This document shows, piece after piece, positions 1 to 5,306 of a stretch of 34,383 bases of DNA; position 1 is the first letter of the stretch; every line of letters begins with the position of its first letter. The notes under the pieces were generated by a model. The model ran no database searches, had not been told where the DNA came from, and saw only the letters and a program-made list of their open reading frames with translations. The stretch lies in contig ADNK01002805.1 in the NCBI GenBank assembly GCA_000320545.1, positions 1 through 34,383 on the forward strand, given 5' to 3'. Source of the stretch: Bigelowiella natans CCMP2755 (lineage: Eukaryota > Protista > Cercozoa). The translations under genes were made by a program, and so were the position numbers.

Positions 1-14
1 GTGAGTCTGCACAC

Positions 15-552
15 CCCTGTTTTGGTGTCAAGCATGACAGAAGGAAACCTGTGCGTAGTAGCAGCAGTAGTAGTAATTAACAAGAGTAGAAGATACTATA
101 GTGATCTTTCTGTCTTTCTCTCGCGCCCTCCACCAACACCCCGCTCTCTCCTTACTCGATAATTTCTTGGTTCTGAAGTCTCTGCCCATCCTCACACCTG
201 TGTACATGGGCGTCGTTCGGTTAGGTAAAGGTAAAGTGACATAATTGCATGTGTGTGTGTGTGTGTGTGTGTGTGTGAGCTGTTAGTAATTCAAAATTGC
301 TATTGACGCTGATTATCCGGCTGCCATATTTGATTTACTCGTCGTCGTCGTTGTTGTTGTTGTTGTTGTTGTCATCATACGTGGCCTCGAAGTCGAGAAT
401 GCAAAGATATTTCACTTCCGCAAGCTGAGATGACCGCACGCACACGTACAGACCAGGGGGGGGGGGAGAGGGGCAGGAGGAAGGAGCACATAATTAACAA
501 AGACGTTTGCAGAATATCATACATCATACGTATATTATGATGCCAGTGAGAG

Positions 553-597
<45 letters not shown>

Positions 598-876
598 ATT
601 TGCATATAGTGTTCCTTAATAGTAGAGATTACACCTCTGTTTCTGATCTTATTGCGCGCGTTCTCCAATTCTGCAAGTGAAGGCAGCGTCATACACGCAA
701 TAATCTAGCTGGAGCGCCATTGGTGGTGGGGGGGGGATTCGAATGGGGTTTTTCTCTCGTGGATATTCTCAACCAATGATGCCCCAGCCGATCGATGCTG
801 TAATAAAGCAGAATTGATGAAGCTCCTACCTCTATTTCACAGAGCTTTTTGTGCTGCCCATGTCCTTTTACCTCCT

Positions 877-930
<54 letters not shown>

Positions 931-1119
931 ACATGCGTACATGTGCATGCATGTGCGTGTGCAAGGGGGGGGGCATGATGAGTTTGGAATGACCGACCTC
1001 CACTTTGGCAATGTAGGATGGGGGAATAATACCGCTCTGGTTCAAACCCTCCGTAAGAATGACTCTTCATTGGTAGCATCAGGTCCGCCCAGCCCCCCCC
1101 CCAATATACACACCGAGAG

Positions 1120-1161
<42 letters not shown>

Positions 1162-2482
1162 AGAAAAATAAAAACATAACCTCAGAAAGAGCAACCGAGT
1201 CTATCTCAATGGACATCACATCGGTGTTTGCCAGAACACCGAAATTAATCAATTTCAATCATGATAATGATGACACTAATATATAATAATTCCAAACACA
1301 GCGTATGCTATTTCCCCAATCTACTGCTGCTTTGCCGCTACTGTTCTGTGCAATAGCTGGTGGTATGTGCTGTACGCTACTACCACTATTACTACTACTA
1401 CTGCTGCTAGTAACTATTGCCTCTCCTCCCTATACTACCGATTCGTGGAAAGATACAGCTTGATCCCATCCTTAAGACACCTTGTCACCACAATACCATT
1501 ACTACCTTACGACGACGCATGTCGGCAGTGCAATGCAGCTGGATTCTTTACAATGCGAACAACAACTGCATCGTAGGTAGGAGCAGAATCCCTAATGCTT
1601 CTCTCATATGCCACCCCCCTCACACCATTACTACTACTGCTGCTACTACTGCTACTGCTATTACTACTGGCGGCTATTACTTCTCCACATCGAGATGGAT
1701 TAGCAGTTGTACGGTGCCTGAAAAAAACATGTATGTGGATTTATGGGCAAAAGAAGCAGCGGCGGCAGCATGGGGAGAATCTTATCCTGCATGCCATAAG
1801 CAGACAGCTGGTTTGTGCGCCATGTGTGATATGGACAAAATGGAAAAAATTGAAACAATAAAAAAATTTAAAACAATAATGATAATAATAATAATAATAA
1901 TAACAACGAAAATGTAGAAGAGGGGCACCTCTCATCCCGCTGATCGTGTCCCTCGACAAGAACGGATCTTAACACAAGAACAAAGACGCACGGGGGAAGA
2001 AGTTGAGGGGCAGACATTACATCGCTGCAAAGAAATTGGACATAAGAAGATCTCCCATTTCTCGCACATACAGCTGGAAAAGTGCACATGCTTCCGAGTC
2101 ATTCGATTGAGTCCGGTTTTTCTATCGAGGTTTGGAGGAAGGCGGGGGAGGGGGGGGGGGGGGGGGATGCAGCAAATGGAAAATATATCAGTACGCGAAG
2201 GAGGCAATAACCTACTCACCGAATGTAAGCAAATCGGTTCGGAAATAACGATGATCAAAGCATAAGATGTTTCAATGTATCGGAGTCTTTAGCGTTTGTG
2301 AAATCTATGATTTCGTTCAAACACACACATACACACACATACACGCACAAACACACGGACACCTCATCATATCGTATCGCATCGTATCGTATCGTATCGT
2401 ATCACACCTTATGCTGTCAAATGAGTCCCAATATGTTCCATGAATGCAAGCTTGGACCTTCACATCATCGTCATCATCAATC

Positions 2483-2516
<34 letters not shown>

Positions 2517-2965
2517 TGTAGCATACTTTCTACATAGTACCAGCAGCACACCAGCAGCACCCATGATGGATATAGTAGATATTTTCTGCTTTATCTCCCC
2601 CCCCTCCCCTCCTCCCCCTCTCTCCCTCTCAGTCGGTGTGTGTATAGACGTGTTTGTGCAGATAGAGAGAGAGAGAGAAAGAGGGTGAGAGATGAAAGAG
2701 GGTGGGGAGCGAAAATTACTTGGTTTGCATTTGTTATCTCCGTCATCATCGCGGTATCGTTGAGACTCCTTATGCTGTGTCCCTTTTGTATATACACATG
2801 TGTCTTTGTGTGTGTATGTGTGTTCTTTGCCAGATGTGCTGCATGAATGAATCAACTCAAGAATGATACCTGATTTGCCCGAATATAATACTCCGCGTTT
2901 TGGCTAGTAAGAAAGTCCATTCCACATAAACACGCAAGTAAGCAACATAAACAGACACACACACG

Positions 2966-3001
<36 letters not shown>

Positions 3002-3921
3002 GTACAATTATATTATATATTCTCGCGACAATGTATGATTTTGCCATCTTTGACAACCAACATTCAAACTTCGTTTATTCGCATAGAATATCGTATGCGA
3101 GTGCTAAACATACTTTTTCCTCATATCATCAGCGAAATCCCCGACGTAGCGCCTTGGGGGGGTGGGGAAGTAACCAAAAAATAAAAGTGTTTTGTGTATT
3201 TTCAGAATCCACATCAGAGAACACGCCAAAGCTCCATACTGTGCTTGAAAAGACGACTTCAAAAAGGGGTAAAATTAGAGAGGAAACAAAGAAGCGGAAG
3301 TGCAGGAGCAAGAACGAGAAAGAGAAGAAACGTGGAAGAAAGGAGTAAAATTAGAAACGTGCGCGTATTAAATGTAAATTACATTAACTTCTGGACATGC
3401 CCAGGCTTCATCCCTGCTTTCCGCATATCCTGCCATAGCTGCATACGAACGCTTCGATTTATTACACCGAACAACCCGAAACATCACTACTATGTATACA
3501 CACCTTGTCCTCTGGGCTGGAATCCATGAGCTTCTGCATCGTAACCTTTAGGCTATCTTCTAGGATTTTTCTGTACTCAGAGTTTGAGCCGAGCTTTGAT
3601 TCCTCCAGAACGGTTTGCAGCTGGGGAATTTTGTAGTTGGGGTCCTGAAAGGAAGAGAGAAATTGAAACGACGAACTAGCTTCGGTGTTGGGAAACGATG
3701 ACTTACAAAGTGTCGGAGCCTGAATCGTTGCTTCTTGCAGTTTCTAACGATTTCCTGTATCTTTTCGATCTTCTTATCATCTTCAGTAAATTGGTCGAAT
3801 ACTGATATCTTGAGCAGGTCGCCAAGCTAACGTACGTATAGTGTACATGGCACAAAGCAGAATAATATGGGTTACAATGCTCCAACAGAGCATGTCGGAC
3901 ATTCTCGCGAATGCATATATC

Positions 3922-3960
<39 letters not shown>

Positions 3961-4416
3961 GTGTGTGTGTGTATAATTATATGTATCAATGCAATGAAGG
4001 GTTCCTTTCAATGATATATTAATCTTCAGCCAAATCCCCACCCCTTAAACGAAATGGTTTCCGCGCCAAAAAAATTGGGTATTATCGGGATCGGAATGGT
4101 CGTTGGTAAACTGACCTTCACGTATCCATCCGGCGTCATCTTTAGCCCATAATCGAGAGCCTTATGCCTATTGAAAACAAAATTAAGCTTGTTGGGTTTT
4201 GCAATGTGATGACAAAGTTCATTTAGCACTGTATACCTGAGCACGCGAGTCAAAGCCCGTGATAATCGTTCCTAATGTTTGAAGAAGAAACAGGAGGAGG
4301 ATGAGGAGGAGGACAATGGGTGAAAATAGAACAAGAAACAAACGATTGCGAAACAAACGACTGCGAACGAAAGGAGAAAATTCCATGTTTGCTCCGACCT
4401 GAATGGATCTTTCCAT
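15..4416 (-). CDS. TPT1: tRNA 2'-phosphotransferase (Tpt1/KptA) with SAM-like insert, fused to an ERI-1-like DEDDh 3'-5' exonuclease; 3' end runs out of the window
   Basis: Phase-consistent exons: 4416-4399 MERSIQ; 4271-4237 ERLSRALTRVLR; 4167-4116 HKALDYGLKMTPDGYVK; 3826-3707 LGDLL..IVRNCKKQRFRLRHF; 3644-3504, 3438-3383, 3152-3114 (insert); 2903-2870 YYIRANQ; 2782-2720 GHSIRSL; 2457-2408 ACIHGTYW; 2121-2072 GLNRMTRKHVHFS; 1967-1929 TISGMR; 1230-1181 DVMSIEID (acceptor reads GG, not AG); about 1063-998 VILTEGLNQSGIIPPSY (5' edge garbled); 874-830; 670-635; 424-381 YLCILDFEAT; 197-156 CEDGQRLQNQEIIE; 48-15 FPSVMLDTKTG. The Tpt1 Arg-His-Arg-Arg catalytic tetrad and the HGT motif are present. 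Confidence 0.9.
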
Positions 4417-4753
4417 GGCTTTGCAATAAAGAAGGGGGAGGAGGAGGAAGGGGAGAAGACGAGACAGAAGAATATTGGAATTTTACCGAATTGTTTGTCG
4501 CACTAAAGGAATTTATTCAATTTTTATGCTGCGACTAAAGGAATTTTCTCATTTTTTTGAAAATATCTGGTCGCTTGTCGTCTTGTCGGGAGATCTCGGG
4601 AGACTAAGGACTTCCACTCTTCCAGAAATTGAGATCTTAGAATATTATTGTTATTATTGTTATTTCGAATTAGGAAAATAATAGATCTAAATGTTGACCC
4701 GTAAACATTTAAATCAGAATTCAAACTCTCCACTGAGAGAATTCTCCGCTACA

Positions 4754-5306
4754 ATGGCGGCCGCAGGGCTGAGACATTCCAGGAACCCTGCGGCTATTGC
4801 CACCGCTAAAGCGACTGACCTGGTGCAAAAATTTGGATTTATCGCGTGCGCATGTGCAGTGATCCTCGGAACAGTGTCAGTGTTGATTTTGAAGGAGGTG
4901 ATTTATCCCAATCGACGCTTGCAAGGTTGCTCCTCCATCGCCTTTCGAGGTCTTCGTTCTGATGCTGATACTTTTTGTTTGCAGCTTGGCGAAGAAGTCG
5001 CATGGTGTGCTATGACTTCATAAACACCAAATGCTCTCGGGGAGAAAACTGCAAGTACTGATACATTTGTACATTATGTTCATACACCACGCAAGCACAC
5101 GCACGCACGAACTCACAATATGTATATTTATATATTAACATATTAACAAATTGTTGTTCTTTATCAGATTCGCCCACAAATCGGAATGGAAACCGAAGAA
5201 AATATGTCGCGATTTTCGAATAGGAAATTGCACGCGACAGGAGTCGTGCATGTTCTCGCATGACATGGAAGCTCACCGTCAGAGGCGACAAAAGGTGCCC
5301 TTGCTG
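4754..5306 (+). CDS. CCCH zinc-finger protein (partial model)
   Basis: Exon about 5168-5306 encodes KPKKICRDFRIGNCTRQESCMFSHD (C-x7-C-x5-C-x3-H). ATG at 4754 and a small exon at 4985-5004 are candidates, but they do not join this frame without a 1-nt indel. The 3' end is unresolved. Confidence 0.6.

What the first reader, a model, noticed from the sequence alone, without database searches (positions are those of the whole stretch)
15..4416. Tpt1 2'-phosphotransferase apparently fused to an ERI-1-type 3'-5' exoribonuclease: a candidate RNA end-healing plus trimming enzyme
Seen: after the Tpt1 C-terminal motif (VILTEG..IIPPSYIAKVE) there is a splice donor and no stop. Two phase-0 GT-AG exons (874-830, 670-635) lead in frame into KYLCILDFEATCEDGQRLQNQEIIEFPSVMLD. 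Known: DFEATC..EIIEFP is the Exo I signature of ERI-1/Snipper DEDDh exonucleases. Tpt1 removes RNA 2'-phosphates using NAD+ and is normally a stand-alone enzyme. Inference: one polypeptide could couple removal of a blocking 2'-phosphate to 3' trimming of tRNA, rRNA or small RNAs. I do not know of a characterised protein with this architecture.
Basis: partly seen in the sequence, partly recalled or inferred. Interest (0 to 1): 0.85.

Follow-up and report, generated by a model that had tools for sequence, protein, structure and literature searches.

The report
Real Tpt1–ERI3-like exonuclease fusion gene
This alga (Bigelowiella natans) really does splice an RNA 2'-phosphate-removing enzyme and an RNA-trimming exonuclease into one protein, but the same two-domain protein is already listed, unstudied, in databases for many protists including trypanosomes, so this is a new member of a catalogued family.

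Summary
On the minus strand, 20 GT-AG exons (4416 to 15) form one open frame. Spliced RNA contigs from three public runs and three JGI transcript contigs carry these junctions. One 2,021-nt cDNA runs from the Tpt1 5'UTR to the exonuclease stop. The rest of the exonuclease lies on contig C935 and has Exo II, Exo III and an RGG tail. The full ORF is 559 aa. The exonuclease is closest to human ERI3, not ERI1. The genome is Bigelowiella natans, whose JGI gene model for this gene is a 156-aa fragment.

The architecture is not new. At least 98 protein clusters carry both domains. 67 have Tpt1 first (chlorarachniophytes, Cymbomonas and others). 31 have the exonuclease first (Trypanosoma, Leishmania; some entries are named after both domains). 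I found no paper that characterises any of them. Both active sites are conserved across the family.

Functional coupling is inferred, not shown. All assembled cDNAs retain the frame-breaking 104-nt intron 11. Its removal is seen only as junction contigs.

The parts
4399..4470 (-). Exon 1: 5'UTR (about 4470-4417) plus start codon ATG at 4416-4414; codes MERSIQ
   Evidence: model; X17 contig piece 4398-4470; L014 1-54 is 5'UTR, ATG at L014 55
4237..4271 (-). Exon 2: Tpt1 N-lobe start (ERLSRALTRVL, first base of Arg18)
4116..4167 (-). Exon 3: catalytic Arg18-His19 (LRH) and the following residues
   Evidence: joint 3826/4116; aligned to human TRPT1
3707..3826 (-). Exon 4 (40 codons): Tpt1 N-lobe up to KKQRFRLRHF
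   Evidence: (joints 3826/4116, 3643/3706)
3114..3644 (-). Exons 5-7 (3644-3504, 3438-3383, 3152-3114): lineage-specific insert of about 78 aa (aa 76-153) inside the Tpt1 domain
   Evidence: Joints 3438/3504, 3151/3382, 2903/3114; no Pfam match; shared with P0005 and paralogue P0225
2870..2903 (-). Exon 8: ...AEYYIRANQ, with catalytic Arg162
2720..2782 (-). Exon 9: GHSIRSL...ANQ
   Evidence: (joint 2455/2718)
2408..2457 (-). Exon 10: HGT NAD-binding motif (VQACIHGTYWDSFDSIR)
   Evidence: (joint 2121/2408)
2072..2121 (-). Exon 11: GLNRMTRKHVHFSS
1968..2071 (-). Intron 11 (104 nt): often retained. Retention shifts the frame and brings a stop, splitting the ORF
   Evidence: Retained in L014, L032 and L033. 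Spliced joint 1967/2072 and unspliced contig 1938-2101 are both present in X15/X17/X18
1929..1967 (-). Exon 12: ...DTISGMR, with catalytic Arg232
1439..1717 (-). Exons 13-14 (1717-1681, 1480-1439): Tpt1 C-lobe
   Evidence: Joints 1716/1928, 1478/1679, 1064/1439
998..1064 (-). Exon 15: last Pfam-matched Tpt1 exon (VILTEG...IIPPSYIAKVE); ends in phase 0 with no stop
830..874 (-). Exon 16: first linker exon (EVKGHGQHKKLCEIE); base 840 differs in the cDNAs (Cys to Tyr)
   Evidence: Joint 670/830
635..670 (-). Exon 17: second linker exon (NWRTRAIRSETE); holds the conserved D/N-W-x-T motif
   Evidence: Joints 670/830 and 424/635; motif conserved in P0005/6/7
381..424 (-). Exon 18: start of the exonuclease domain, Exo I D-x-E (LDFEAT)
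156..197 (-). Exon 19: CEDGQRLQNQEIIE
   Evidence: (joint 46/154, cut +2)
15..48 (-). Exon 20: FPSVMLDTKTG, the last exon in the window. The gene continues across an assembly gap onto contig C935
   Evidence: Loose end at place 14 in X17/X18

Best explanation
Window 4470-15 (minus strand) is the 5' two-thirds of one Bigelowiella natans gene of about 31 tiny exons. When fully spliced it encodes a 559-aa two-enzyme protein.

- aa 1-281: a complete Tpt1/KptA NAD+-dependent RNA 2'-phosphotransferase, with a lineage-specific insert of about 78 aa.
- A short extension holding a conserved D/N-W-x-T motif, then a tether of about 10 aa.
- A complete ERI3-like DEDDh 3'-5' exoribonuclease domain.
- An RGG-rich tail that probably binds RNA.

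Shown: the exon structure, the in-frame splicing of the two halves, intact catalytic residues in both domains, and conservation of the same architecture in other chlorarachniophytes and many other protists.

Inferred: the Tpt1 module uses NAD+ to convert an RNA 2'-phosphate to 2'-OH. That phosphate could be the splice-junction mark left by a Trl1-type ligase, or a terminal 2'-PO4. The tethered exonuclease needs a clean 3'-OH end. It would then trim or degrade the same RNA from its 3' end.

My odds: fusion gene real 0.95; both domains catalytically competent 0.8; the two activities act on the same substrate 0.4. The confidence given for this explanation (0.8) refers to the fusion gene encoding a protein with two competent enzyme modules, not to the coupling.
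For: Exon model: 20 exons and 19 GT-AG introns form one open frame of 348 codons.

Transcripts: one spliced contig per run in X15, X17 and X18 carries Tpt1 C-terminal joints and exonuclease joints together. Its depth (51/37/265) is similar to that of the Tpt1 N-terminal contigs (41/17/288). Three JGI transcript contigs (L014, L032, L033) from three samples carry the same junctions. L014 runs from the 5'UTR to the stop after the exonuclease.

Domains: P0001 holds the Tpt1 C-terminus, the linker and the full exonuclease. RNase_T scores 99 bits and PTS_2-RNA 28-37 bits. The N-terminal piece scores 127 bits on PTS_2-RNA.

Active sites: D-E-D-H-D aligns with human ERI3 (7K05, E 2.4e-45). R18/H19/R162 and HGT align with human TRPT1. 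Across 48 Tpt1-first fusions the tetrad (R25, H26, R89, R159 in P0007 numbering) and the exonuclease residues D271, E273, D368, H425/6 and D430/1 are invariant or at least 90% conserved.

Orthologues as single ORFs: Amorphochlora P0007 (a genome annotation), Partenskyella P0006 and P0005.

Both domain orders exist: 67 Tpt1-first and 31 exonuclease-first.

ERI3-like domains are also fused to NADAR, microbial-type PARG, NUDIX and the MJ1316 cyclic-end recognition domain.

A subset of Tpt1 enzymes removes terminal 2'/3'-phosphates (PMC6573784).
Against: No enzymatic data exist for any member.

Every assembled long cDNA (L014, L032, L033) retains the 104-nt intron 11, which breaks the frame. Removal of this intron is seen only as junction contigs in three Logan runs, at spliced/retained depths of 46/15, 11/7 and 72/104. 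No single record shows the complete 559-aa ORF.

Contigs cannot exclude an internal transcription start for a stand-alone exonuclease. The raw RNA run gave only 4 reads.

The AlphaFold model of the orthologue P0007 shows two confident domains, a disordered linker and pTM 0.60, so there is no sign of a fixed interface.

The characterised S. pombe Tpt1-Yae1 fusion shows that a domain fused to Tpt1 need not cooperate with it (PMC12810181).
Confidence: 0.8

Rival explanations
1. The fusion is real but the domains are not functionally coupled. They act on unrelated substrates and are linked only by evolutionary accident or for co-expression, as in S. pombe Tpt1-Yae1.
For: In S. pombe the Tpt1 and Yae1 domains are both essential but need not be linked (PMC12810181). 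The predicted structure shows a disordered linker and pTM 0.60.
Against: The same pair of domains is joined in both orders and in distant lineages. ERI3-like domains are repeatedly fused to other NAD+/ADP-ribose or RNA cyclic-end domains, and there is a triple Tpt1+NADAR+exonuclease protein. Both active sites are conserved family-wide.
Confidence: 0.3
2. The locus mainly yields non-productive mRNA. Intron 11 retention brings a premature stop, so the fusion protein is made at low level, or retention is a regulatory switch. Alternatively, a stand-alone exonuclease could be made from an internal start.
For: All three JGI transcript contigs retain intron 11. In run X18 the retained form is deeper than the spliced one (104 versus 72).
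Against: The spliced joint 1967/2072 is canonical, restores the conserved HVHFSS...ISGMR sequence, and is the deeper form in X15 (46/15) and X17 (11/7). The orthologues have an uninterrupted ORF. The downstream ORF would start inside the Tpt1 C-lobe, after many upstream AUGs.
Confidence: 0.12
3. Two neighbouring genes have been merged artificially by read-through transcription or by contig assembly.
For: The read-laying tool warns that a contig across two genes shows no single transcript. The JGI gene model for this locus is Tpt1-only (P0224).
Against: There is no stop between the domains once spliced, and the linker exons are spliced in phase 0. The linker carries a motif conserved in orthologues. 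Six independent data sets agree. Orthologous single ORFs exist in at least three other chlorarachniophyte data sets and in dozens of other taxa. P0224 simply reads into intron 7 and stops.
Confidence: 0.03
4. The Tpt1 module acts mainly as an ADP-ribosyltransferase that caps 5'-phosphate ends of RNA or DNA. The exonuclease would then belong to an ADP-ribose-nucleic-acid pathway rather than to 2'-phosphate removal.
For: Tpt1 enzymes can ADP-ribosylate 5'-phosphate ends (abstracts of PMC6182162 and PMC12678800). Sister fusions of the exonuclease are with ADP-ribose-removing domains: NADAR, PARG and NUDIX.
Against: The full R-H-R-R tetrad needed for the two-step 2'-phosphotransferase reaction is kept. 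The genome encodes an Rnl1/Trl1-type ligase domain that could create 2'-PO4 junctions.
Confidence: 0.1

Closest known systems
Chlorarachniophyte Tpt1-exonuclease proteins: Amorphochlora amoebiformis AAMO2058_000886300 (P0007, 494 aa), Partenskyella glossopodia MMETSP1318 (P0006), MMETSP Transcript_5042 (P0005, 570 aa)
   Same: Same domain order (Tpt1 then ERI3-like exonuclease), 46-52% identity to P0001, conserved D/N-W-x-T motif after the Tpt1 domain, and a basic Gly/Arg-rich tail. They group with P0001 in the exonuclease tree.
   Different: P0006 and P0007 lack the 78-aa insert in the Tpt1 domain and have a longer linker (about 70 aa, against about 30 aa). None has been characterised.
Kinetoplastid 'Exonuclease/RNA 2'-phosphotransferase, Tpt1/KptA family, putative' proteins (Leishmania P0038/P0079; Trypanosoma P0057, P0066, P0077)
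   Same: The same two Pfam domains in one polypeptide of 525-629 aa. The exonuclease domain is 39-44% identical.
   Different: The order is reversed (exonuclease first, Tpt1 last). Their exonuclease domains form a separate clade (support 97). This suggests a separate fusion event, but the quick tree does not prove it. I found no functional study.
Human ERI3 (PDB 7K05, 2XRI) and ERI1/3'hExo (1W0H, 1ZBU)
   Same: DEDDh fold family. All five catalytic residues align. E 2.4e-45 to ERI3 and 2.3e-40 to ERI1.
   Different: No SAP domain (an ERI1 feature) and no zf-GRF domain (an ERI2 feature, from my own knowledge). Here the domain is fused to Tpt1 and an RGG tail.
Stand-alone Tpt1/TRPT1 (human 7YW3, yeast Tpt1, bacterial KptA)
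   Same: PF01885 is covered end to end. The R-H-R-R tetrad and HGT motif are present.
   Different: A 78-aa insert lies between the N-lobe and the IRANQGHS strand, and there is a C-terminal exonuclease fusion.
Schizosaccharomyces Tpt1-Yae1 (PMC12810181)
   Same: The only experimentally dissected two-domain Tpt1 that I found.
   Different: The partner is an Fe-S assembly adaptor, not a nuclease. There the domains need not be linked, which is a caution against assuming coupling here.

Membership tests
Tpt1/KptA RNA 2'-phosphotransferase (PF01885) | Profile match above Pfam's gathering score over the whole domain | tested here: met
   L014:55-711 scores 127.1 bits (profile 4-132/177). L014:819-1835 scores 36.9 bits (profile 138-177/177). 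The cut-off is 26. The two pieces are contiguous once intron 11 is removed.
Tpt1/KptA RNA 2'-phosphotransferase (PF01885) | [quoted passage not shown] | tested here: met
   R18-H19 (LRH), R162 (IRANQGHS) and HGT align with human TRPT1. R232 (ISGMR) aligns with the orthologues. All four are at least 90% conserved in 48 fusions.
Tpt1/KptA RNA 2'-phosphotransferase (PF01885) | NAD+-dependent removal of an RNA 2'-phosphate | not testable with these tools
   Needs a biochemical assay or yeast tpt1-delta complementation.
DEDDh exonuclease, ERI-1 family (PF00929) | Profile match above the gathering score over the whole domain | tested here: met
   RNase_T 99.4 bits, profile 2-163/164, cut-off 24. Only Exo I (exons 18-20) lies in the window. 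The remainder lies in an assembly gap and on C935:26691-28626.
DEDDh exonuclease, ERI-1 family (PF00929) | Exo I D-x-E, Exo II D, Exo III H-x4-D | tested here: met
   LDFEAT, GDWD and HHSGIDD align residue for residue with human ERI3 7K05. They are invariant or at least 90% conserved in A2.
ERI1 (3'hExo/Snipper) orthologue proper | N-terminal SAP domain next to the exonuclease domain | tested here: not met
   No SAP hit in Pfam scans of P0001 or of the cDNA pieces. The best structural relatives by sequence are ERI3 entries. That SAP defines ERI1 is from my own knowledge.
Tpt1 + ERI3-like exonuclease fusion proteins (PF01885+PF00929 architecture) | Both domains in one open reading frame of one mRNA | tested here: met
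   In-frame spliced junctions appear in six data sets. Caveat: the fully spliced 559-aa ORF is pieced together from contigs, because every long cDNA retains intron 11.
Tpt1 + ERI3-like exonuclease fusion proteins (PF01885+PF00929 architecture) | Orthology to other Tpt1-first fusions | tested here: met
   The top hits of P0001 are fusions with the same order (P0005/6/7, E 1e-85). They form a common clade in the exonuclease tree, with weak support of 68.

The most novel reading that the evidence does not exclude
ERI3-type exonucleases, whose cellular substrates are poorly defined, may be the dedicated 3'-end nuclease arm of NAD+/ADP-ribose-linked RNA end processing. They have been joined repeatedly to Tpt1 (in both orders) and also to NADAR, PARG-like, NUDIX and RNA cyclic-end-recognition domains. 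In this reading Tpt1 would unblock 2'-phosphorylated or ADP-ribosylated RNA ends so that the tethered exonuclease can trim or destroy them. That would be a quality-control or repair pathway not yet described in any eukaryote.
Probability: 0.3. Interest if true: 0.6.

Novelty: new member of a known kind. Interest (0 to 1): 0.4.

Why it matters
For this genome, the JGI gene model (a 156-aa fragment) needs replacing by a gene of about 31 exons and 559 aa that spans two contigs.

More generally, a Tpt1-exonuclease protein exists in many protists, including the tractable parasites Trypanosoma and Leishmania. It occurs in both domain orders, with both active sites conserved, yet I found no study of it. 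That recurrence is a good guilt-by-association lead to what ERI3-like exonucleases do. It may also bear on why Tpt1 persists in lineages where tRNA splicing may not need it. It is not a new kind of protein, and the coupling idea is still only an inference.

Tried and rejected
1. Pfam-profile searches of the genome for PF01885 and PF00929 missed the window's own gene, because its exons are 12-47 codons long. No conclusion about other Tpt1 copies can be drawn from them.

2. The RNase_T hit on C3084 was considered as the missing rest of the gene. I rejected this because that locus has its own Exo I motif and is a separate, stand-alone ERI-like gene.

3. Pattern searches for the next exon seen in RNA found only an 83%-identical version with a stop codon on the 1-kb contig C934. 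The true exons (161 nt of CDS) are absent from the assembly.

4. A separate start for the exonuclease was considered: an ATG near 692 in the other frame of exon 17, plus an alternative acceptor.

5. The raw RNA run X21 placed only 4 reads. It gives no information on transcript ends, strand or isoform ratios.

6. Eight literature searches found no paper describing a Tpt1-exonuclease fusion. The library lacks most subscription journals, so this is not proof of absence.

7. The exonuclease-domain FastTree resolves the exonuclease-first type as one clade. It scatters the Tpt1-first type (19 label changes) on a weak backbone. Many 'exonuclease-only' rows may be truncated contigs. I therefore do not claim a number of fusion events.

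8. The AlphaFold model of the orthologue P0007 gave pTM 0.60 and no evidence for a fixed domain interface. I ran no complex prediction, because I do not claim that the domains bind each other.

9. The joined 20-exon model has no reference. It was used only inside local scripts, for frame checking and for alignment to fetched sequences. Searches used single-exon references and the natural cDNA contig and its ORFs instead.

Full report
WHAT IS IN THE WINDOW

The minus strand from 4470 to 15 holds a gene built of very small exons (18-141 nt) separated by introns of 62-374 nt that are rich in microsatellites and homopolymer runs. I assembled the exons in a local script. The result is 20 exons, 19 GT-AG introns and one open frame of 348 codons, starting at the ATG at 4416-4414.

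The frame reads a Tpt1 domain with these features:
- LRH (R18, H19).
- An insert of about 78 aa (aa 76-153).
- IRANQGHS (R162).
- HGT.
- ISGMR (R232).
- The family's C-terminal VILTEG...IIPPSYIAKVE.

After them come KYLCILDFEATCEDGQRLQNQEIIEFPSVMLDTKTG.

TRANSCRIPT EVIDENCE

Logan contigs of three runs from three studies (X15, X17, X18) were laid on window 1-4700. In each run a single spliced contig (1205, 1229 and 804 nt) carries the joints 1716/1928, 1478/1679, 1064/1439, 670/830, 424/635 and 46/154. All are CT..AC on the plus strand, which is GT..AG on the minus strand. The depth of that contig (51/37/265) is close to the depth of the contig covering the N-terminal Tpt1 exons (41/17/288).

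No exon in the junction region reaches 30 codons. I therefore searched the representative protein library with a 30-residue reference: exon 15 plus seven read-through residues (window:977-1066:-). It gave one hit, P0001 (329 aa).

P0001 starts at the Met of ISGMRG. It runs through the Tpt1 C-terminus and the same linker into a complete exonuclease domain (LDFEAT, GDWD, HHSGIDD) and an RGG-rich tail. Pfam finds RNase_T (99 bits) and the end of PTS_2-RNA.

Its source is a 2,021-nt JGI transcript contig (L014). My model CDS matches L014 at 55-712 (100%) and 817-1202 (99.7%) without gaps. This confirms every junction, including 998/874 and 381/197, which one search did not print. L014 runs from the Tpt1 5'UTR to a stop at 1836-1838 and a 3'UTR. 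Two further JGI transcript contigs from other samples (L032, L033) carry the same junctions.

A CAVEAT: INTRON 11

L014 713-816 is the retained 104-nt intron 11 (window 2071-1968). Retention shifts the frame, which is why the gene caller split the contig into two ORFs. L032 and L033 retain it too.

Removal of intron 11 is documented only by the joint 1967/2072 in X15, X17 and X18. The depth of the spliced form against the unspliced contig 1938-2101 is 46/15, 11/7 and 72/104. The spliced sequence restores HVHFSS-YPFLSRDTISGMR, which aligns with the uninterrupted orthologues, so it is a true intron.

The fully spliced ORF is 559 aa. No single record shows it whole.

THE REST OF THE GENE AND THE ASSEMBLY

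The window is the start of contig C932. The cDNA downstream of exon 20 maps to eight exons on C935:26691-28626, on the same strand and at that contig's end. The 161 nt between (L014 1203-1363) are absent from the assembly.

The 1,074-nt contig C934 repeats window 1-360 exactly. It then carries an 83%-identical version of the next exon that contains a stop codon. I cannot explain it; it may be assembly debris. C933 is a 99.2% copy of window 1109-2926.

ORGANISM AND ANNOTATION

The best hit of the N-terminal cDNA piece is the EukProt record jgi/Bigna1/143663 (P0224). It is 100% identical but only 156 aa long, and it ends by reading into intron 7. From my knowledge of JGI portal names, Bigna1 is Bigelowiella natans. 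The current gene model therefore misses most of the gene and the fusion.

A paralogue (jgi/Bigna1/144451, P0225, 66% identity) maps to C767:31105-35545. It keeps Tpt1 exons 2-10 and the exonuclease exons from the equivalent of exon 20 onward. Only about 170 nt separate them. It therefore lacks the Tpt1 C-lobe with the fourth Arg, and it lacks Exo I. It is probably a decayed duplicate.

DOMAIN INTEGRITY

The Tpt1 domain is covered end to end by PF01885 (127 + 37 bits). It aligns with human TRPT1 at the LRH, IRANQGHS and HGT motifs.

The exonuclease is closest to human ERI3 (7K05/2XRI, E 2.4e-45). ERI1 follows (1W0H, 2e-40) and then ERI2. All five DEDDh residues align. No SAP domain is present. 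It is a member of the ERI-1 family of the ERI3 type.

An alignment of 48 Tpt1-first fusions shows the following (P0007 numbering):
- The Tpt1 tetrad (R25, H26, R89, R159) is at least 90% conserved.
- The Exo I residues D271 and E273 are invariant.
- The Exo II and Exo III residues are at least 90% conserved.

Both active sites are therefore maintained across the family.

An AlphaFold model of the orthologue P0007 has mean pLDDT 87.7 and pTM 0.60. It shows two confident domains. A confident beta-hairpin extension follows the Tpt1 domain and contains the conserved D/N-W-x-T motif. A disordered linker comes next. In B. natans only about 10 residues separate that extension from the exonuclease domain.

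DISTRIBUTION

Searches with P0001 and with the full-length relative P0005 returned mostly proteins that carry both PF01885 and PF00929. Among the 223 proteins fetched by that stage, 67 have Tpt1 first and 31 have the exonuclease first. Pfam coordinates confirmed the order for 12 of them.

Named Tpt1-first examples:
- Amorphochlora amoebiformis (NCBI, 494 aa).
- Partenskyella glossopodia.
- Cymbomonas tetramitiformis.
- A record labelled Rmarinus.

Exonuclease-first examples are Trypanosoma, Leishmania, Leptomonas, Phytomonas and Novymonas. Some are annotated 'Exonuclease/RNA 2'-phosphotransferase, Tpt1/KptA family, putative'.

In a quick exonuclease-domain tree the exonuclease-first proteins form one clade (support 97), away from the chlorarachniophyte group. 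The opposite orders suggest at least two fusion events. The tree is too weak to count them.

Related ERI3-like domains are also fused to NADAR, microbial-type PARG, NUDIX, DUF1810, DUF4326 and the MJ1316 RNA cyclic-end recognition domain. A Tpt1+NADAR+exonuclease protein exists as well.

HOW IT PROBABLY WORKS

Shown: one mRNA, one frame, two intact catalytic modules and an RGG tail.

[quoted passage not shown] A subset of Tpt1 enzymes also removes terminal 2'- or 3'-phosphates (PMC6573784). From my own knowledge, DEDDh exonucleases need a free 3'-OH end.

Inference: the Tpt1 module clears a 2'-phosphate, either internal at a ligation junction or terminal. The tethered exonuclease then trims or degrades the same RNA.

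The genome encodes both RtcB (C1874) and an Rnl1/Trl1-type ligase domain (C232). Junctions bearing a 2'-PO4 are therefore plausible here. I did not establish whether that ligase is a true Trl1.

The strongest argument for coupling is the recurrent fusion in both orders, together with the NAD+/ADP-ribose theme of the exonuclease's other partners. The strongest caution is S. pombe Tpt1-Yae1, where the fused domains need not be linked (PMC12810181).

NOVELTY AND VERDICT

The architecture is already abundant in public databases and is named in kinetoplastid annotations. This is a new, previously mis-annotated member of a known but apparently uncharacterised family. Eight literature searches found no study of any member. 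I score interest as moderate.

PROCEDURE NOTE

The joined exon model has no reference. It was used only in local scripts and was not sent to any search tool. Searches used single-exon references and natural cDNA contigs.

Noticed in passing
window 1968-2071 (intron 11): This 104-nt intron is retained in all three JGI transcript contigs (L014, L032, L033). In Logan runs its depth rivals that of the spliced form. Retention shifts the frame and brings a stop after HVHFSS, so it could be a regulated detained intron or just noisy splicing.
   Followed up: partly
window 3114-3644 (exons 5-7, aa 76-153): A 78-aa insert sits inside the Tpt1 domain, between KKQRFRLRHF and AEYYIRANQGHS. It has no Pfam match. 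It is shared with P0005 and with the C767 paralogue, but not with Amorphochlora or Partenskyella.
   Followed up: partly
window 2900/3719: A non-canonical joint (TG..AG on the plus strand) skips the insert. It is seen in one contig in each of three runs, at depths 30/6/53. It is out of frame and runs into a stop, so it is probably an artefact or a non-productive isoform.
   Followed up: partly
L002 (G000:C934:1-1074): This 1-kb contig repeats window 1-360 at 100%. It then carries an 83%-identical copy of the next exonuclease exon with an in-frame stop. It matches neither the expressed sequence nor the paralogue. Unexplained.
   Followed up: partly
L030 (G000:C767:31105-35545, + strand): A paralogous Tpt1-exonuclease gene (JGI model Bigna1 144451, P0225, 66% identity) appears to have lost the exons for the Tpt1 C-lobe and Exo I. 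Exo II reads GDRD instead of GDWD. It is probably a decayed duplicate.
   Followed up: partly
L009 (G000:C3084:16100-17250): A separate, stand-alone ERI-like DEDDh exonuclease gene with longer exons and its own Exo I (MDLEWTC...EIIEF).
   Followed up: no
L025 (G000:C232:4769-5353) and L023 (G000:C1874): An intron-poor ORF with an RNA_lig_T4_1 (Rnl1/Trl1-type ligase) domain (52.6 bits), and an RtcB gene with many exons. Both RNA-ligation routes may exist in this organism. I did not check whether the first has kinase or CPDase modules, or whether it is a contaminant.
   Followed up: partly
window 840: A single-base difference between the genome and all three cDNA contigs changes Cys to Tyr in linker exon 16 (KKLCEIE versus KKLYEIE). 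It is probably a strain polymorphism.
   Followed up: no
L031 (G000:C933:1-1815): A small contig that is 99.2% identical to window 1109-2926. It is probably an uncollapsed haplotype.
   Followed up: no
window 1-4800, introns: Nearly every intron carries (CT)n, (CA)n, (GAT)n/(GTA)n microsatellites or C/G homopolymer runs of 10-16 nt. These repeat tracts coincide with holes in RNA and contig coverage.
   Followed up: no
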